A stretch of 64,000 nt of DNA from the sequence record NC_029103.1. One strand, 5' to 3'. A model generated the notes under the pieces. It did no database searches. It saw nothing but the letters and a program-made list of their open reading frames with translations, and was not told the origin of the DNA. Both the position numbers and the translations under genes were made by a program. Below, in pieces: positions 8,701 through 55,786 of the stretch. The stretch's first letter is position 1; every line of letters begins with the position of its first letter.

Positions 8701-11700
8701 GAAGTATAACGCAATTGAGGAACAGATACATAGTGCCGAAAGTAATTGGCTACTTAACGGGTTTGAAGGTTTTGTTAACACTTTTAACACCGCTATAAAC
8801 GACCTGATGAACGATATTAACAACTTTATTTATTCACATTTAGGTAAGAATACTTTCACTGAAATCTTGGCAGGGATCGTTGACGGTGCCATATTTGTAG
8901 CAATCTCCGCTATTCCTTATGTCGGGCAAGCCTTCGATGTATTGTCGTTGATATCTTTTGTTGGTAGTATAGCATTTGATTTGTTAGCTGGTTCTGCGTC
9001 ATATAACGAGACGGTTAATTCCTTCAAACAGATGTTTACAAACCCAACGTCAATATCAACGATAGTGACACTGATAACTGGTGTACTTGCAAGAAAGTTG
9101 ATAGAACCAGACGAGGTAGCCACTACTGACATAACTAAGACTACGGACAGCGTGAAAACAGTCCTGTCAAAAATTGAGGATTCTATAAAGGACAAGGTCG
9201 ACATATCAAAAATAAGTGGTAAGGTAACTGATACTGTCAAAACAGACGTAATCAAGTCCCCAGACTTCTCAAAAATTAATGAACCTGGTGAAAGAGGTAA
9301 AGATAGATAAGCTAGACATTAAGGCACTGAAGAAATTAAGTAACAAGATGGTAAAGATTGAAGGGGACGCATANNAATTCGTTGATACTGATATATCCGA
9401 CACAAAGATTACGATAACAACTTCATACATTTTAAAGGACGTAAAACTGAAGGCGTTTGACGGAGCAAAGAATATTGTAGTAAAGTTAAGCAAAGACTTT
9501 GATAAGGGTATAGAAGTTAACGTTACACCGAAGCTTATTGACGATGTTGATAATGCAGTTGCNACATTTGAAAANGGNNAANTCAAGNTCACAACGNTNA
9601 NNGAAGAGACCATAAAGAACGCACTNTCTTCAAACGATTTAGNCACAGCTCTGGACACTATCAAAACTAANNTGNCNGNGACTGTCGNCAAACAACTGCT
9701 TGATGAACTCAAAACGNAAGACGGCAACATAGTGAAAATATCCCCAGACGAGGGCATNGCNTATNTCGGTGGTAAATTCTACGATGTGTTCTACAAGGAC
9801 GGCACACNAGNGAAGATGGANGNGATANATGACGNTNTNGCATTAGNTAAGCTAGAAAAATTCGNAGAGGACACTGTAGGTAACTTCGTAACGCTTAACA
9901 AGAACTTGATAGAACAACTGTTGAAGAACAACGAAAACTTGCGGACTATCGAATACCAATTAACAAATAAGCTTACAGGCAACGTTGTAAGGAATGAGTA
10001 CCTGAGAATTAAGGACTTATTAGGGAATGAGACAAAGTTCACGTCCAAAACTGAGATAAACCCTAACGAAATAAAATCAATTAATGAAATTGAAGGAAAG
10101 AATCTACCTGAAATATCTCAAAGTTCTGGGTATTTAACACCACAGGAAGTCGATAATCTACTCAGCTTTGATAACAAGTTTTCGCAGATATTCAGGCAAC
10201 TAATTGATGAACANCCNGAGGTCAAAGACTTACTTGAGAAGTTAGCGTCGAAAGGAAAATTGCCAGCTAGTTTNANACNACTTGAAGATATAGCTGATAA
10301 GATAGAATCATTTTACGANGCTCTGGACAANGAAGTGAAAGATATAGAGAGCAAGTTAAGCAGTAACCCACTATTCGACGGTGTAAAATGTCTCGAGTGT
10401 TGTTAAGTCTATTGCGGAAAAANTAGTAAAGAATAAACCCAGATGACGTACTGGACGGCGANGTACCTAAGATNTCACTATCAGATGTCCTAGACCGCTT
10501 AAGCACAGCAGATAGGGCTAAAGTAGTGTTGAATTACCTGAAGACAGACCCTAAGGTATACGAACGAGGTAATGCAAAAAACTGAGCAATTTCTCTAGCT
10601 GATACTAGAGATTACATACTAGCCCAAGCATACGACCAGATTGCTATAGCAATGAAGAATAATAAACCGATAACTGCCGATGGACTGGAAAACGTAGTTT
10701 GCAGATATAGACGACGCTATAGAAAATATAGAAAATATAAAGTCCTACAGAATCACAAACACCTGTTTCAACAACAAACACCACTTCTAACACTACCACC
10801 TCAACAACAACAACTACAGAGGGTACAGCTTCGAACAGCTCTTTCAAACGGCACATCAACAGTCCTACAATCATCAGAACAACAGCAAGGAGGGGTATTG
10901 ACGAGAGTNTCTCTAAANNCAATGGTAGAAAACGCCTTATCGAGCCTATTCCCAGATTTCGAAAAACTNCCGTCAACTGTGAAAACGTTATTTGAGAACA
11001 TTGTCCTCAGGGAGTTAGGCGAAAAAGGAGAACTAACAACAGAAGACATAACGAAAGCATTAGAGGACGCAAAAGCAGAGTATCAAGCGATATTGGACAG
11101 CATCAAGAAGATGGTTAATGACGTTAAAACTGAAGTGAAGACTAGNAGNGAAGAAGAAAACATTGTAAATAACCTGGACACTAGTATAGNCGANCTGGAG
11201 AAAAAAGTAAAGTTTGATGTGAAAAAGCTGTCGCAATTCTTGTCTATAGCTAGTTTCGTAGCAGACATGTTTAACGTCGCAACAGCAGTTGAACTTATAA
11301 CACAACTGAATGCACTCACTCCCCAACAGTTACAGCACACGATTATCCTTACCCAACCTCAGCTGGAGACAATAACTAGTATTGCCCCAACAATTAAGGA
11401 ACTAATCGTAAAGTTGGACAAAGGCGTGAAACTAAAAGACTTACAAGGTATAGCAGTGCAAATTAGGGACGCTTTGCAGAAGATGGGGATTAATATCGAC
11501 GTCGAACAGTTGCTAAGGATAATTAGTGTGTTACAAACTATAACTAAGGAGTTCAATTTACAAATTAGCGAGATAGCGTCTCTTATCGCTATAAACGATG
11601 TTAACGGTTTAACTGTTATTCCTATACCCGTCATATCAGGTATTACGTCACTGATTACGTCTATCCAGACTGGAAACACTACCACAATAACTGGAAACAC

Positions 11701-24281: not shown

Positions 24282-24639
24282 TATTCATCACCTTCAGACA
24301 GATTGGGAATTCAGGGTCGAGGTTTATATCATCTATTTTTAGGAGTTCCTTCACTCTTTCTCTAGCCTTCCTAATCATTTGATATAACGAAATATTGTTG
24401 TCGGTGCAGGCACCTAGTGCGATATAAAAATCTAAAGCAGATGCAAGTATTGCGTCTATAACGTTTCTAACCTGGTCTGTTGGCACGTTAATGCTTACCT
24501 TGTTCTCCTCATCCTTGAACGTTATTGTGTCACTGACCTCATAGTATTTGTTAGGAAGTTTGAAGGAAAAACACTTTGCGAAGTGTTCTGCTATGGGTTC
24601 AGGTATGTAGACTCTTGTGTTAACTACATAGTATTTCAT
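24271..24639 (-). CDS. Hypothetical protein
   Basis: 122-aa ORF, first gene of the ATPase operon. Confidence 0.6.
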   Translation of the reverse strand: MKYYVVNTRVYIPEPIAEHFAKCFSFKLPNKYYEVSDTITFKDEENKVSINVPTDQVRNVIDAILASALDFYIALGACTDNNISLYQMIRKARERVKELLKIDDINLDPEFPICLKVMNNAS

Positions 24640-52282: not shown

Positions 52283-52649
52283 CTTTCTTTTCGCGAGTGT
52301 TCTCCGCTCGGTTCTGTCTCAGCGGGCTGAGGTTGTCTGGCTATCCCTAAAACAGCTGTTTGTGGATTCATTTTCATGATCATCCCAGCTCACTCGCCAA
52401 ACTTGTATCGCCCTTTTTTGAATCATTAACTTTTTATCTGAATTTAACTTAGATTTAAACTGACCCATATATCACACCTCTTTTTTCTGATTTGTGACGA
52501 AGACGGAAAAACGGATTATGACGAGAGGAGTCCCAACATCCTCCTCTCCTTTTCCATATTTTCTTAATATTCGAGCTTCCCGTCGCGGTTCTGTCCAACT
52601 CGTTAGAGATTTAAATAACAGCATGGAGGAGTAGAAACTGGGGTTTAAG

Positions 52650-53240
52650 ATGATATTAGCAATAGGCTATAACCCAATAATCGAGAAACTTCAAGACATC
52701 ACTGGTTACATAATATACCCAAGGTTCTTCGACGACAAGAAGACATTACTCATAGACAGGAATTATAAGAGATACCTTAAGGAGCTTTGGTTTAACAAGA
52801 ACAGGATAGAAGTAGCGTTGTACCCTGACAATATTGACTACCTCCTTCCAGTCCCAAAGGACATAACTTACGTCGTTCCTATTCATACCCTGAGTCAGTT
52901 AGAAATTGCCGACAAGCTTACGGAAAATAACTATAAGGTGATAACTGGGTACGCCTCAGACCAGAAGTACAGGGACTATACCATTGACGACTTCATCAAG
53001 GCGTCTAAATACAAGAATTGGTACCTGGGCATTTCCACCAAACATGAGCTGAAAGAAGCCATGCTCTATTCATTCGATTACGGAGACATCACGTTAATGT
53101 TGCTCGGTAGATTCCAGCAGTTAAAGGACATTAACTACGTGAGGAGGAAGCTGAAAGAACTGTCACAACTGGTAAGCAGGCATGGAAAACAACTTACTCT
53201 GTTCGATTTTTCACAAAGCAACGGCACCTCGAACCTCTAG
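52650..53240 (+). CDS. Hypothetical protein, possible degenerate TGT-like barrel with C-terminal PIP-like motif
   Basis: LYPD, VVPIH, WYLG and DYGD motifs; QLTLFDF at the C-terminus. Confidence 0.6.
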   Translation: MILAIGYNPIIEKLQDITGYIIYPRFFDDKKTLLIDRNYKRYLKELWFNKNRIEVALYPDNIDYLLPVPKDITYVVPIHTLSQLEIADKLTENNYKVITGYASDQKYRDYTIDDFIKASKYKNWYLGISTKHELKEAMLYSFDYGDITLMLLGRFQQLKDINYVRRKLKELSQLVSRHGKQLTLFDFSQSNGTSNL

Positions 53241-53377
53241 CGGGTTTTTTATCATACTCTCTCCTAAACAGCTGTTTTAGAGTTTCTGCTCACCTGCTCG
53301 CCCGTCGCAGTTCTGCTAACCTGTTAGGCAGAAAATTTATATACCAGACTGCAAAGAGTATAAGTGGGGATAAAAAA

Positions 53378-53836
53378 ATGTCAACCCCACAAACACAAAC
53401 CCAACCTCAAACCCAAGCACAAATTCCAAGATACGAGAACTGTCTTCTTGTCACGAGGCATAAGCTCTTAGAACAACAGGAAGAAGACCTAATGAAAATT
53501 TGTAATAAGGTGTCAAGAGTGGAAATGCTCCCTGTAGATCTCAATGAACTAAAGAGAACGGTGGATTTCTATGATGCAGTGATTGGAATAGTTCCTTTAC
53601 CGCTCCAAGTACAAATATTACAAATGAAGAAACCGGTTTTGCTTTTCGAAATGATAGCAATAGGTACAGCAAAAACACATGAGGAAGCGGAAGAGATGTT
53701 AGCAAAGACAGGGAAGCAAGGGATAATCCTTCCCCCAGTACGTAGCGGAGAACCGTTCCGGGTATCAGTATATAAGGGAGTGATCTTGGTGAAAGAAATA
53801 AAAGTTGTTGATGAACCAATCATACAACACTGGTAA
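53378..53836 (+). CDS. Csx16/Crn4-like protein (candidate viral cyclic-oligoadenylate ring nuclease)
   Basis: LLVTRH ... DAVIGIVPLPLQVQI parallels Csx16 (FVTRH ... DTVIGTLPVHLAAEV). Confidence 0.5.
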   Translation: MSTPQTQTQPQTQAQIPRYENCLLVTRHKLLEQQEEDLMKICNKVSRVEMLPVDLNELKRTVDFYDAVIGIVPLPLQVQILQMKKPVLLFEMIAIGTAKTHEEAEEMLAKTGKQGIILPPVRSGEPFRVSVYKGVILVKEIKVVDEPIIQHW

Positions 53837-53989: not shown

Positions 53990-54145
53990 AAGCCAGCCCG
54001 TTTTTTTATGCTCTGCTCTCTCAAACAGCTGTTTGAGAATTTTAGCTTGCCTGCCCGCTCCTGCCCGCTCGGATGTTTCTTCATAACCTGTTAGGCAGAA
54101 AATTTATATATCAAACCGACGAAGTATAAATGTGGTGGTAATATA

Positions 54146-54499
54146 ATGAGATGTTTTAAGGTTCAGGAGGTAATTTGCGTAGATGAAGAAGAAAAGATCA
54201 TGATAAACCTTACAAGGAGAAAATATAAAATTTTAAAGGACGAGGAATACTTCAAATTAATAGAGGAGTTAGAGAAGTACGGTAAAGAGTTAGAAGTTTT
54301 CGTCATAGCAGATCATCGGTACTTTCCAAGGACTTATTATGCTATTTATAGTATCAAGGTCGGTACANCNATATACTANTATTTTNTGGANNTTTANGAC
54401 GGTAGNAGTGCANNNTATTCNTATNNTTTNTGNAAGNNAAGNAANGAATGNGAGAGTANCATTAATGACTTAGAAGAAGANAACATAGCGATGNNNTAA
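54146..54499 (+). CDS. Acidic protein, paralog family D (copy 1)
   Basis: YFPRTYYAIY motif; CTAAC-type promoter. Confidence 0.65.
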   Translation: MRCFKVQEVICVDEEEKIMINLTRRKYKILKDEEYFKLIEELEKYGKELEVFVIADHRYFPRTYYAIYSIKVGTXIYXYFXXXXDGXSAXYXYXXXKXXXEXESXINDLEEXNIAMX

Positions 54500-54549
54500 T
54501 TNATTTTTTCTTTTTTGTTTTCTCTCTAAAACAGCTGTTTGAGGTATTT

Positions 54550-55017
54550 TTGTGTGTTATACGCTTTGATGTTGTTCAACTTCTAACGAAACTTGTTAGG
54601 TGTTACGGCTTAAATATTATTTACGACAAGAGAGTATANGAGGGCAAAATGACCAGATCAGTAGGGTTTTTATGTGATACGTCAGAAATTTTTTTAAACA
54701 TAGATGATGAAGTTGTTATCATTAAATTTAATAATAATAGAAAAATCATCGACATTGATATCGACNTAAAGAGTANATANAGNGATTATTCGAATGAATG
54801 TAGGGAAATTAAAGAAGTGGAGACGGATATAGAGGAATTATACTCAGCAAAATACTATCCTAGAACATATTATACAATTTATAGGGTTGTTGTACAACAA
54901 CCTAAAATAAAGCTATATTTAATGGAAAAGTTTAACGGAACCACAGGTTTAATCGTGTTCTTCTCTTGCAGAACTTTCAGAAACTGTATTAGAAAAATNG
55001 ATAANTTTGAAAAATAG
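54550..55017 (+). CDS. Paralog family D (copy 2)
   Basis: YYPRTYYTIY motif. Confidence 0.55.
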   Translation: MCVIRFDVVQLLTKLVRCYGLNIIYDKRVXEGKMTRSVGFLCDTSEIFLNIDDEVVIIKFNNNRKIIDIDIDXKSXXXDYSNECREIKEVETDIEELYSAKYYPRTYYTIYRVVVQQPKIKLYLMEKFNGTTGLIVFFSCRTFRNCIRKXDXFEK

Positions 55018-55191
55018 TCATTTTTCCTTCTTTGCGTATAGTACTTTCCCGTGGATTTTCAACACTCCGGTTCTGTCATACTCTGCTAACGCGTCTAGAT
55101 ACTCTTTATACGCGTCGACAATATAATCTACTCTCTTGTGCATCCTTTCCAAGATCTTTTTCTGTTCATCTGTTAACTTATGTTCAACCAT
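55018..55191 (-). CDS. Small protein of a type common on Sulfolobales mobile elements (start MVEHKL)
   Basis: LTDEQKKILERMHKRVDYI...RTGVLKIHG; family recognition from memory only. Confidence 0.6.
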   Translation of the reverse strand: MVEHKLTDEQKKILERMHKRVDYIVDAYKEYLDALAEYDRTGVLKIHGKVLYAKKEK

Positions 55192-55234
55192 TTGGGATTC
55201 ACTATTAACTATACTTCTGTCGAACAATTTATAA

Positions 55235-55786
55235 CTACATTTCGCTCCACATTCCCGTCGCCATNANGACNTATATTATGCTCATCACTTCTCCGAACNA
55301 CGATAAGAAATCGATAATTAANGAGAGGTCTNNGACAAACAGCTGTANTGGNGGAGCGATGAACGGTAGTGATATNCTGGACGTCATAGGTATCAGTATA
55401 GCGGTAAAATACACTAAAATGCTNTNGAAGCTNTTGAAGATGAACTGAAGTAGTAAGTAAATGAAGATTATTTGCATAGTACTCATTTGTTGTTGAGACA
55501 AGTTGAGCAGGTAATTTCTNGTGAANAACGCAGAAATAGTNGCAAGTCCTGCTATTACTCCTCCTGCTATTATGCCTGCACCTTGAAATATACTCCCTAG
55601 AATGTGTTCTAGAAATAGCACTAGATTGAACGACAGCAATGTTGAGATATAATTTGCAAGTGTGGGGTTCGTTGAATATTCGTTGAAATTAATCAAGGTC
55701 ACTAGCAAGTCGACTAGAAAAGTCGAATATATTATACCCTCATTTATCTTGTAGAAAACGGTCGCAAGTGAACCTATCAGTCCCAT
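55235..55786 (-). CDS. Multi-TM membrane protein
   Basis: Several hydrophobic helices; operator at 55814. Confidence 0.65.
   Translation of the reverse strand: MGLIGSLATVFYKINEGIIYSTFLVDLLVTLINFNEYSTNPTLANYISTLLSFNLVLFLEHILGSIFQGAGIIAGGVIAGLXTISAXFXRNYLLNLSQQQMSTMQIIFIYLLLQFIFXSFXSILVYFTAILIPMTSXISLPFIAXPXQLFVXDLXLIIDFLSXFGEVMSIIXVXMATGMWSEM

What the first reader, a model, noticed from the sequence alone, without database searches (positions are those of the whole stretch)
53378..53836. Viral Csx16/Crn4-like protein: candidate non-AcrIII-1 ring-nuclease anti-CRISPR
Seen: LLVTRH near the N-terminus, then DAVIGIVPLPLQVQI and a hydrophobic strand. This order matches my recollection of Csx16 (FVTRH...DTVIGTLPVHLAAEV...YFHL). 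Established: the Csx16 family (Crn4) is associated with type III CRISPR and degrades cyclic oligoadenylates, and the known archaeal viral ring nuclease AcrIII-1 (DUF1874) is a different family. The gene is under the composite promoter. Inference: the virus may destroy cOA signals with a captured Crn4-type enzyme.
Basis: partly seen in the sequence, partly recalled or inferred. Interest (0 to 1): 0.75.

Follow-up and report, generated by a model that had tools for sequence, protein, structure and literature searches.

The report
Csx16-like early anti-defence gene in SMV3
An archaeal virus gene already flagged by its promoter as a probable anti-defence gene turns out to be a distant, remodelled relative of Csx16, an enzyme that destroys the cyclic-oligoadenylate alarm signal of type III CRISPR, so the virus may use it to silence that alarm; this is not yet shown.

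Summary
The window is Sulfolobus monocaudavirus SMV3. The ORF at 53378-53836 (+, 152 aa) is real, intact and conserved. It is also not a bona fide Csx16. It has no hit to PF09652 or TIGR02620, lacks Csx16's second invariant His and its RGxEL motif, is about 35% longer in its core, and is never CRISPR-linked. It does look like a remote Csx16 homologue. hhalign gives 72-93% probability across 12 alignment combinations, against about 0.2% for reversed controls. Three family members have PF09652 as their only Pfam hit, all below threshold. A genuine Csx16 model finds the ATSV orthologue of gp69 as its top match in the viral structure library (TM 0.57, E 0.02). The composite promoter is real and conserved. 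A 2024 paper already lists gp69 as predicted anti-defence gene ADG.68, with no function assigned. SMV3 lacks AcrIII-1. Best reading: a divergent, mobile-element-specific Csx16-like protein that binds and probably cleaves cA4. That function is inferred, not shown.

The parts
53378..53836 (+). CDS of SMV3 gp69 (AXI69_gp69, YP_009226292.1 / ALG97006.1), 152 aa, 17.4 kDa, pI 6.3. Published as predicted anti-defence gene family ADG.68.
   Evidence: PHROG 31280 matches full length, E 9e-90. 32 close homologues and 51 representatives at 50% identity.
53378..53428 (+). N-terminal T/Q/P-rich tail (residues 1-17). Predicted disordered, variable or absent in homologues.
   Evidence: pLDDT below 50 for residues 1-13. 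The alignment shows variable length, and several homologues start at about residue 18.
53432..53461 (+). Strand beta1 followed by the T26-R27-H28 loop. R27 and H28 are the only residues invariant across the whole family. This segment aligns with the invariant [ST]RH of Csx16.
   Evidence: invariant R27, H28; Csx16 invariant R11, H12.
53573..53668 (+). beta3-alpha3-beta4 segment, D66-AVIGIVPLPLQVQILQMKKPVLLFEMIAIGT-97. It is the equivalent of Csx16 'GDxVIGTLPVNLAAEVxxRGxRYLHLSL' and carries most of the homology signal. G70 is conserved in the viral subfamily and P73 is near-invariant family-wide.
   Evidence: bridge members 17-24 bits; PF09652 profile positions 32-65.
53669..53794 (+). C-terminal half, alpha4 - beta5 (IILPP) - GE - R128 - beta6. 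It is specific to this family, and beta5 is an insert relative to Csx16. R128 (nt 53759-53761) is near-invariant.
53828..53830 (+). H151, invariant only in the SMV/ATSV-like viral subfamily.
53245..53349 (+). Composite upstream module. It comprises a T-run; the palindrome AAACAGCTGTTT (53266-53277); CCCGTCGCAGTTCTG (53301-53315); an imperfect inverted repeat CTGCTAAC/GTTAGGCAG (53313-53331) abutting a BRE-like AGAAAA; and the TATA box TTTATATA (53336-53343), 34 nt before the ATG.
   Evidence: The module is about 90% conserved upstream of homologues in L015 and L016. It matches the description of SMV anti-defence promoters in PMC11065993.
53846..53989 (+). gp70 (47 aa), 9 nt downstream and probably co-transcribed. 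Listed as low-probability anti-defence gene pADG.12.
54084..54116 (+). Second copy (94% identical) of the inverted repeat/BRE/TATA block, driving gp71 (54146-54499, ADG.69). Same regulon.

Best explanation
gp69 is an early-expressed anti-defence gene. Its product is a divergent, mobile-element-specific relative of the Csx16 family of small CARF-like (derived Rossmann) ring nucleases. Proposed mechanism: like Csx16, Csx20 and Crn1, it forms a homodimer whose ligand pocket is built from the C-terminal ends of beta1 (T26-R27-H28) and beta3 (G70...P73). It binds cyclic tetra-adenylate made by the host's type III Cas10. It cleaves it without metal to linear A2>P, with H28 as general acid/base and R27 and/or R128 stabilising the transition state. 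Csx1-type effectors are then never switched on. Shown here: the gene is real and under purifying constraint. It has a confident alpha/beta fold. It is remotely homologous to Csx16 over beta1 to beta4. It carries a conserved early anti-defence promoter. SMV3 has no DUF1874. Inferred: dimerisation, the ligand, cleavage rather than binding only, the catalytic residues, and the in vivo effect.
For: Homology. hhalign of the 37-sequence family against 6 annotated Csx16 gives probability 92.3%, E 5.7e-7, residues 20-93 against Csx16 1-65. Twelve alignment combinations give 72-93%. Reversed and column-shuffled controls score 11-13 against 38-45. Every real Csx16 scores positively against the family HMM and 99% of family members do so against the Csx16 HMMs, unlike reversed or shuffled sequences. 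Family members P0039, P0040 and P0035 (E 1e-30 to 1e-40 to the gp69 profile) have PF09652 Cas_VVA1548 as their only Pfam hit (E 3e-4, 2e-3, 0.05; 21.4, 18.6, 14.3 bits). They also hit several PADLOC Csx16 models (best 4.7e-5). gp69 itself has a single PADLOC hit, Csx20 (E 0.008). Structure. The gp69 model has pLDDT 89 with order b1-a1-b2-a2-b3-a3-b4-a4-b5-b6. The Csx16 model has pLDDT 93.7 with order b1-a-b2-b3-a-b4-a-b5. Foldseek of the Csx16 model against all of BFVD puts A0A120L048 at rank 1 (probability 0.97, TM 0.57). A0A120L048 is the 144-aa protein that matches the gp69 model at E 3e-18 and 40% identity, taken to be the ATSV orthologue. Context. gp69 is ADG.68 in PMC11065993 Supplementary Data 1. 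The promoter module is conserved. There is no DUF1874 among 86 SMV3 ORFs. A distant member is followed 7 nt later by a SAVED-like gene (E 2e-5). Csx16 is a cA4-specific ring nuclease and occurs in phage genomes (PMC12409355).
Against: gp69 itself gives no hit to PF09652, TIGR02620 or any PDB sequence, and only 6.4 bits against my Csx16 HMM. All curated-model hits of relatives are below the gathering threshold of 25 bits. The Foldseek reciprocal hit has E 0.023, and the forward PDB search gives only generic Rossmann methyltransferases at TM about 0.3. Two of the four invariant Csx16 motif clusters are absent. The second His aligns with Leu51, and RGxEL has no conserved counterpart. The shared parts, a strand-loop and a strand-helix-strand, are the generic core of Rossmann-like folds. 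No member was found in a CRISPR locus. The ATSV orthologue lacks the promoter motif. The catalytic residues of Csx16 have not been mapped by mutagenesis in the papers read. Ring nuclease genes do not always act as Acrs in their native setting (AcrIII-1).
Confidence: 0.45

Rival explanations
1. A cyclic-oligoadenylate sponge. The Csx16-like fold binds cA4 tightly but cleaves it slowly or not at all, as reported for Csx15, and protects the virus by sequestration.
For: Half of the Csx16 invariant residues are missing (second His, RGxEL). Csx15 is a CARF-fold protein that binds cA4 well but is a very slow nuclease (PMC13148439).
Against: R27-H28 are absolutely invariant across a very divergent family, which is more typical of catalysis than of binding alone. 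The Csx15 paper argues that sponging is a poor strategy against the large amounts of cOA made by type III systems, and notes Csx15 is absent from phages.
Confidence: 0.15
2. An anti-defence protein with the same fold but another target. It could bind a different nucleotide signal (cA3, cA6, a CBASS-type cyclic oligonucleotide, SAM-AMP). Or it could bind a host defence protein directly.
For: The early anti-defence promoter only says 'anti-defence', not which defence. The C-terminal half is family-specific. A distant member neighbours a SAVED-like gene, and SAVED domains sense diverse cyclic oligonucleotides. Crn4 shows that ring nucleases can have broad specificity.
Against: The closest detectable relatives, Csx16 and more weakly Csx20, are both cA4-specific. 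cA4 is the predominant type III signalling molecule (PMC12409355), and from my own knowledge it is the signal used by Sulfolobales type III systems.
Confidence: 0.2
3. An early viral gene unrelated to defence, for example nucleotide metabolism or host take-over. Under this view the similarity to Csx16 reflects convergent or generic Rossmann-like features rather than shared function.
For: All matches to curated Csx16 models are sub-threshold. Foldseek against PDB returns only weak generic Rossmann hits. Distant members sit beside replication-type genes (Prim-Pol, RHH, MoxR ATPase). Block shuffles show that a single 12-column block already gives roughly half the hhalign score.
Against: Out of 24,736 Pfam and 5,027 PADLOC models, the hits converge on Csx16/Csx20 and on nothing else consistently. 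Two separated motifs align collinearly. Csx16's best viral structural match is precisely this family. The gene was independently predicted to be anti-defence.
Confidence: 0.18
4. A genuine Crn4-family ring nuclease, as the finding's title says.
For: There is a superficial T-x-H near the N-terminus and a conserved Arg near the C-terminus. Crn4 has T13, H15 and R112.
Against: Crn4 is the former Unk01, described as a novel non-Rossmann fold of 4-5 beta-strand pairs and one short helix. gp69 has 4 helices and 6 strands in alpha/beta order. The family profile found no Crn4 chain among PDB sequences at E<=10. The Crn4 codes 9SMA, 9QS9 and 9R7B are not among the top 50 Foldseek PDB hits.
Confidence: 0.01

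Closest known systems
Csx16 (Pfam PF09652 Cas_VVA1548 / TIGR02620), a cA4-specific CRISPR ring nuclease (Hoikkala et al. 2025, PMC12409355)
   Same: Both are small stand-alone alpha/beta (CARF-like, derived Rossmann) proteins. Both have an invariant [ST]RH loop after beta1. Both have the G-x-[LV]-P strand end followed by an 'xLxxxVxxxG' helix and a hydrophobic beta4. The order of secondary-structure elements matches. Csx16 also occurs on viruses, for example Methanobacterium virus Drs3.
   Different: The gp69 core is about 133 aa against about 100 aa. It has an extra helix between beta2 and beta3, and an extra strand (IILPP) before the last strand. It has no second invariant His, no invariant Trp in helix 1 and no RGxEL. 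It has its own near-invariant Q34 and R128, plus H151 in the viral subfamily. It scores below every curated Csx16 threshold and is never found in a type III CRISPR locus.
[not shown]
   Same: It is the only PADLOC hit of gp69 itself (E 0.008, residues 22-63, covering the TRH region), seen in 4 of 22 close members. It has the same kind of fold.
   Different: The hit is weak and N-terminal only. I could not obtain Csx20 sequences for a profile-profile test.
AcrIII-1 / Crn2 (DUF1874), the known archaeal viral ring nuclease
   Same: The proposed role is the same: a viral enzyme that destroys cA4. Histidine-based, metal-independent chemistry is proposed for both.
   Different: It is an unrelated family. 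SMV3 has no DUF1874 hit. AcrIII-1 mostly lacks the early anti-defence promoter (motif prevalence 0.13) and failed as an Acr from its native promoter (PMC11065993), whereas gp69 carries the early promoter.
Crn4 (Unk01), a broad-specificity ring nuclease (Chi et al. 2025, PMC12830947)
   Same: It is a small dimeric ring nuclease that is also found on phages and plasmids, with essential His and Arg residues.
   Different: It has a different, non-Rossmann beta-rich fold and shows no sequence or structure match to gp69.
ADG.68, a predicted anti-defence gene family of archaeal viruses (Bhoobalan-Chitty et al. 2024, PMC11065993)
   Same: It is this very gene, AXI69_gp69 / YP_009226292.1, flagged by the same promoter motif. 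Its neighbours gp71 (ADG.69) and gp70 (pADG.12) are also listed.
   Different: The paper assigns no function or fold to ADG.68. It counts 2 homologues, 1 of them with the motif.

Membership tests
Csx16 (PF09652 / TIGR02620) | Scores above the curated threshold of the family models | tested here: not met
   gp69 has no PF09652 or TIGR02620 hit even at E<=10, and none of the 22 close members has one. The best relatives reach 21.4, 18.6 and 14.3 bits against a cutoff of 25.
Csx16 (PF09652 / TIGR02620) | Invariant [ST]-R-H loop directly after strand beta1 | tested here: met
   T26-R27-H28. R27 and H28 are invariant in 37 diverse members and align with Csx16 R11/H12.
Csx16 (PF09652 / TIGR02620) | Second invariant His after beta2 (H32 in alignment A7) and invariant Trp in helix 1 | tested here: not met
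   The His aligns with L51, and the helix-1 Trp has no counterpart.
Csx16 (PF09652 / TIGR02620) | G-[TS]-L-P at the end of beta3, followed by the 'NLAAEV' helix and beta4 | tested here: met
   G70-I-V-P73 followed by LPLQVQILQ. P73 is near-invariant. This segment gives 17-24 bits in the bridge members.
Csx16 (PF09652 / TIGR02620) | Invariant R-G-x-E-L after beta4 | tested here: not met
   No conserved RG. hhalign treats it as an insertion in Csx16. A K/R-x-x-E-E-A at residues 98-104 of the viral subfamily may be a vestige, but this is only my reading.
Csx16 (PF09652 / TIGR02620) | Protein of about 100 aa with the fold b1-a-b2-b3-a-b4-a-b5 | tested here: inconclusive
   The element order is the same, with two inserted elements. 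The Csx16 model's top BFVD hit is the ATSV orthologue at TM 0.57/0.43, probability 0.97, but E 0.023. No pairwise superposition tool was available.
Csx16 (PF09652 / TIGR02620) | Encoded in or next to type III CRISPR-Cas loci | tested here: not met
   All contexts examined are viral or mobile-element-like. Real Csx16 genes lie beside CARF/Csm6 genes.
Csx16 (PF09652 / TIGR02620) | cA4-specific ring nuclease activity; homodimer with the site at the interface | not testable with these tools
   This needs biochemistry or multimer and ligand modelling.
Crn4 (Unk01) | Non-Rossmann fold of 4-5 beta-strand pairs, one short helix and a beta-hairpin arm | tested here: not met
   The model is alpha/beta with 4 helices. 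The Crn4 fold is described. 9SMA, 9QS9 and 9R7B are not among the top 50 Foldseek hits.
Crn4 (Unk01) | Sequence similarity to Crn4a/b | tested here: not met
   The family profile against all PDB chain sequences at E<=10 returns four unrelated chains only. I did not verify independently that the Crn4 chains are in that copy.
AcrIII-1 / Crn2 (DUF1874) | Match to DUF1874 | tested here: not met
   No such hit for gp69. DUF1874 is absent from the top 25 of 31 families listed for 86 SMV3 ORFs at E<=1e-3.
Csx20 | Match to Csx20 models | tested here: inconclusive
   PADLOC PDLC01659, E 0.008, residues 22-63, in 4 of 22 members. Two distant members hit Csx20 models weakly.
Archaeal-virus early anti-defence genes (ADG regulon of Bhoobalan-Chitty et al.) | Preceded by the virus-specific conserved BRE/TATA motif with flanking inverted repeat | tested here: met
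   The block CCTGTTAGGCAGAAAATTTATATA is exact at 53320 and 54087, against 0 expected. The module is conserved in L015 and L016. The gene is listed as ADG.68.

The most novel reading that the evidence does not exclude
gp69 and its roughly 50 sequence clusters constitute a new, mobile-element-only family of cyclic-oligoadenylate ring nucleases, a sister of Csx16/Csx20. It would be the first ring nuclease of an archaeal virus to sit under a genuine immediate-early anti-defence promoter. It could therefore work as a real type III anti-CRISPR during infection, where AcrIII-1 reportedly does not.
Probability: 0.35. Interest if true: 0.75.

Novelty: new variant of a known kind. Interest (0 to 1): 0.6.

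Why it matters
Only a handful of inhibitors of type III CRISPR are known. In archaeal viruses the one known ring nuclease, AcrIII-1, is debated as a true anti-CRISPR, because it is not expressed early and failed to act from its native promoter. Here, a gene chosen independently by its early anti-defence promoter (ADG.68, function unknown) acquires a specific, testable biochemical hypothesis. If confirmed, it would add a further ring-nuclease lineage that exists only on mobile elements. It would show which parts of the Csx16 scaffold are dispensable: the RH loop and the GxLP helix are kept, and the second His and RGxEL are lost. It would also give a thermostable tool for quenching cA4 signalling.

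Tried and rejected
1. Single-sequence and profile scans of gp69 against Pfam, NCBIfam and PDB sequences found nothing meaningful. The recurrent weak FmrO hit (13 of 22 members, best E 0.005) lies over residues 58-97 and I take it as generic Rossmann similarity.
2. Foldseek of the gp69 model against PDB gave only methyltransferase-type Rossmann folds at TM about 0.3, and no CARF, ring nuclease or Crn4 entry.
3. An iterated search with the broad alignment did not reach any named family.
4. I hoped cellular relatives would sit in CRISPR loci. None do.
5. I looked for a paralogue of gp69 in SMV3 and found none.
6. I wondered whether SMV3 and ATSV were the 'two phage genomes with Csx16' of PMC12409355. 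A Csx16 seed hits Methanobacterium virus Drs3 and, weakly, Clostridium phage phiCs5676-1 instead. The paper's table was not available.
7. A SixA-type histidine phosphatase (RHG motif) was considered because of the RH after beta1 and one weak SixA hit. I rejected it: there is no conserved Gly after RH and no fold match.
8. The close viral subfamily alone against Csx16 gives only 21% hhalign probability because its diversity is low (Neff 1.9). The signal needs the broader family.
9. Supplements of the ring-nuclease diversity paper, which hold sequences and the phage list, were not held.

Full report
IDENTITY OF THE WINDOW AND THE GENE

The window is 100% identical to Sulfolobus monocaudavirus SMV3 (KP282677 / NC_029103, 64,323 bp, circular, Bicaudaviridae). 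Window coordinate = record coordinate - 323. The ORF named in the finding exists exactly as stated: 53378..53836, + strand, ATG start, 152 aa. It contains none of the 332 N positions scattered through the deposited sequence. It is annotated as a hypothetical protein, ALG97006.1 / YP_009226292.1, locus tag AXI69_gp69.

THE OBSERVATION

- LLVTRH is residues 23-28.
- DAVIGIVPLPLQVQI is residues 66-80.
- A hydrophobic strand, VLLFEMIAIGT, follows at residues 87-97.

THE FAMILY

- gp69 matches PHROG 31280 (function unknown) end to end.
- Among sequenced viruses, only SMV3 and Acidianus tailed spindle virus (ATSV_A144, 43% identity) carry it.
- Metagenomes add 32 close homologues.
- A full HMMER scan of 1.84 billion representatives gives 51 clusters at E<=1e-3, most of them 135-150 aa.
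- In a 37-sequence alignment spanning the family, only R27 and H28 are invariant. Q34, P73 and R128 are near-invariant. The C-terminal H151 is invariant only in the SMV/ATSV-like subfamily.
- The first 17 residues are a T/Q-rich, variable tail predicted to be disordered.
- Neighbourhoods are viral or mobile-element-like throughout. Close relatives lie in SMV-like contigs with conserved gene order. Distant ones lie next to RHH, Prim-Pol and MoxR-type ATPase genes or among runs of small ORFs. None is in a CRISPR locus.
- One distant member is followed 7 nt later by a 185-aa gene that hits the SAVED cyclic-oligonucleotide sensor domain at E 2e-5 and 24.9 bits, just under Pfam's 26.2-bit cutoff.

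WHAT THE NAMES MEAN

The finding equates Csx16 with Crn4, and that is wrong.

- Crn4 is the former 'Unk01'. It is a dimeric, beta-rich, explicitly non-Rossmann fold with essential H15 and R112 and broad cA3/cA4/cA6 specificity (PMC12830947).
- Csx16 is a separate family. Together with Csx20 it was confirmed as a cA4-specific ring nuclease with a CARF-like derived Rossmann fold. Csx16 HMMs hit two phage genomes (PMC12409355).

IS IT CRN4? NO.

The AlphaFold2 model of gp69 is confident (mean pLDDT 89, pTM 0.75). Its fold is alpha/beta: b1(19-25) a1(32-41) b2(42-48) a2(55-62) b3(67-70) a3(74-82) b4(87-98) a4(101-111) b5(115-118) b6(127-138). Foldseek against PDB (entries to April 2026) gives only weak Rossmann-type methyltransferase hits at TM about 0.3. 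The Crn4 entries 9SMA, 9QS9 and 9R7B are not among the top 50. A family profile against all PDB sequences finds no Crn4 chain.

IS IT CSX16? NOT A MEMBER, BUT VERY PROBABLY A REMOTE RELATIVE.

gp69 and its 21 closest relatives give no hit to PF09652 or TIGR02620. To test the resemblance properly I needed real Csx16 sequences.

- A search seeded with their alignment returned 1,903 proteins. All 120 listed carry PF09652, and many are named Csx16 by their sources.
- Real Csx16 proteins are about 100 aa, with invariant R11, H12, A15, W18, H32, G46, L48, P49, G60, R76, G77, E79 and L80.

Profile-profile comparison:

- The broad gp69 family against Csx16 gives 92.3% probability, with pairwise E 5.7e-7.
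- The match aligns gp69 residues 20-93 with Csx16 1-65.
- TRH falls on SRH, and VIGIVPLPLQVQILQ...LLFEM falls on VIGTLPLPMVAEVQQ...YLHLC.
- Twelve combinations of differently composed alignments give 72-93% over the same region.

Controls:

- Reversed profiles score 11-13, a probability of 0.1-0.2%.
- Single-column shuffles score about 11.
- Shuffles that keep 12-column blocks average 20-24 and reach 80% probability in 3 of 120 trials. A single motif block therefore accounts for about half the score, and the collinear combination provides the rest.

Profile-versus-sequence tests agree in both directions:

- All 120 Csx16 sequences score above 0 bits against the family HMM (mean 7.5). Only 3-5% of reversed or shuffled versions do (mean about -5).
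- 99% of family members score above 0 against the Csx16 HMMs.
- The sequences are related to one another, so the very small rank-test p-values should not be read literally.

Curated models give transitive support. Three secure family members are P0039, P0040 and P0035, with E 1e-30 to 1e-40 to the gp69 profile and 33-37% identity to gp69.

- Their only Pfam hit among 24,736 models is PF09652, at E 3e-4, 2e-3 and 0.05. All three are below the 25-bit threshold.
- They also hit several PADLOC Csx16 models, best E 4.7e-5.
- gp69 itself has one PADLOC hit out of 5,027 models, Csx20 at E 0.008 over residues 22-63.

Reciprocal structure test:

- A confident model of a genuine Csx16 (Drs3 protein with 36 Csx16 sequences; pLDDT 93.7) has the order b1-a-b2-b3-a-b4-a-b5.
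- Searched against the whole viral structure library, its top hit is A0A120L048, with probability 0.97, TM 0.57 on the Csx16 length, and 18% identity.
- A0A120L048 is the 144-aa entry that matches the gp69 model at E 3e-18 and 40% identity. I take it to be the ATSV orthologue. The library gives it no name, so this rests on length and identity.
- The Foldseek E-value of 0.023 is not significant on its own.

What is not shared:

- Csx16's second invariant His aligns with Leu51.
- The helix-1 Trp has no counterpart.
- The RGxEL motif has no conserved counterpart.
- gp69 has an extra helix (a2) and an extra strand (b5, IILPP), plus its own conserved Q34 and R128.

My estimate is about 85% that the homology is real. 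Membership of Csx16 as currently defined fails.

THE PROMOTER

The 'composite promoter' is real. Upstream of gp69 lie, in order:

- a T-run;
- the palindrome AAACAGCTGTTT (12 copies in the window against 0.01 expected);
- CCCGTCGCAGTTCTG (a second exact copy lies upstream of gp68);
- an imperfect inverted repeat abutting a BRE-like AGAAAA;
- the TATA box TTTATATA at 53336-53343, 34 nt before the ATG.

The 33-nt inverted repeat/BRE/TATA block recurs at 94% identity upstream of gp71. The whole module is about 90% conserved upstream of the homologues in two metagenomic relatives whose proteins are only 67-69% identical. It is absent upstream of ATSV_A144.

This is already in the literature. Bhoobalan-Chitty et al. 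2024 (PMC11065993) used such virus-specific early-promoter motifs to predict anti-defence genes. For SMV2 they noted inverted repeats overlapping the BRE. Their Supplementary Data 1 lists AXI69_gp69 as ADG.68 (2 homologues, 1 with the motif), gp71 as ADG.69 and gp70 as pADG.12, all without function.

The same paper reports that acrIII-1 mostly lacks the motif (prevalence 0.13) and failed as an Acr from its native promoter. A Pfam survey of 86 SMV3 ORFs shows no DUF1874.

MECHANISM

Best explanation (confidence 0.45): an early-expressed, divergent Csx16-like protein that binds the cA4 made by host type III systems and cleaves it. The invariant R27-H28 lie at the C-terminal end of b1, and G70...P73 lie at the C-terminal end of b3. 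In Rossmann-like and CARF folds these strand ends form the ligand site, which is established knowledge. His as general acid and Arg as phosphate clamp is the chemistry shown for AcrIII-1 and Crn4. Dimerisation, ligand, cleavage and phenotype are all inferred.

Rivals:

- a non-cleaving cOA sponge (0.15);
- the same fold aimed at another nucleotide signal or defence (0.2);
- a non-defence early function, with the similarity being generic (0.18);
- true Crn4 (0.01).

NOVELTY

The anti-defence prediction for this gene is published, and viral Csx16 genes are known. I found no paper in the searchable library that links ADG.68, gp69 or ATSV_A144 to ring nucleases. The new element is the remote Csx16 relationship of a mobile-element-only family with a remodelled motif set. 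I class it as a new variant of a known kind, with interest 0.6.

Noticed in passing
window 5757, 22257, 32618, 40026, 42238, 43542, 48641, 50509, 52350, 53266, 54023, 54529: The 12-nt palindrome AAACAGCTGTTT occurs 12 times in SMV3, against 0.01 expected. The copies checked around gp67-gp72 are intergenic and usually follow a T-run. It could be a terminator stem or a binding site for a viral regulator.
   Followed up: partly
L007:454-1011 (JGI 3300005099 contig Ga0072682_121504): A distant member of the gp69 family (P0065) is followed 7 nt later by a 185-aa ORF that hits the SAVED sensor domain at E 2e-5 and 24.9 bits (cutoff 26.2). This is a possible mobile-element pair dealing with cyclic oligonucleotides. 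Only a single instance was seen.
   Followed up: partly
BFVD entries A0A0N9NIQ7 and A0A2H4PAY0 (both 133 aa): A0A0N9NIQ7 resembles the gp69 model (TM 0.55, probability 1.0, 16% identity). A0A2H4PAY0 resembles both the gp69 model (probability 0.92) and the Csx16 model (TM 0.59). Both lack names in the tables at hand. They may be further viral Csx16/Csx20-like proteins.
   Followed up: no
L013 (Methanobacterium virus Drs3, record 1477-1788); Clostridium phage phiCs5676-1, record 24295-24438: Drs3 encodes a bona fide PF09652 Csx16 (103 aa, P0183). A Clostridium scindens phage gives a weak hit to the Csx16 seed (E 0.2). These may be the 'two phage genomes with Csx16' mentioned in PMC12409355.
   Followed up: partly
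window 52580-52593 and 53302-53315: CCGTCGCRGTTCTG occurs exactly twice, 60-75 nt upstream of gp68 and of gp69. gp68 has a different TATA region and is not in the published anti-defence gene list.
   Followed up: partly
window, 15 clusters (for example 9374-11194, 19271-21374, 54368-55541): There are 332 N positions scattered singly within coding regions of the deposited genome, 50 of them in gp71-gp74 just downstream of the target. They look like masked polymorphic sites of an assembly from an enrichment culture.
   Followed up: no
window, whole genome (ORF coordinates not resolved by the survey): The Pfam survey of 86 ORFs shows two ThyX (Thy1) ORFs, an IS200/IS605 pair (Y1 transposase plus OrfB with a Cas12f1-like TNB domain), an N6/N4 DNA methylase, a RIP/P131-like protein, a bpMoxR ATPase, a PNKP-type HAD phosphatase and an integrase.
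   Followed up: no
L003:10001-13424 and L004:6991-10432: The distant member P0076 lies in a conserved block with an 80-aa RHH protein and an 874-879-aa Prim-Pol protein, downstream of a bpMoxR ATPase. This is a plasmid- or virus-like replication module.
   Followed up: no
window 52734-52764 and 53422-53452: A 31-nt inverted repeat (77% complementary) joins the coding regions of gp68 and gp69. The gp69 arm ends just before the TRH codons. It is probably chance.
   Followed up: no
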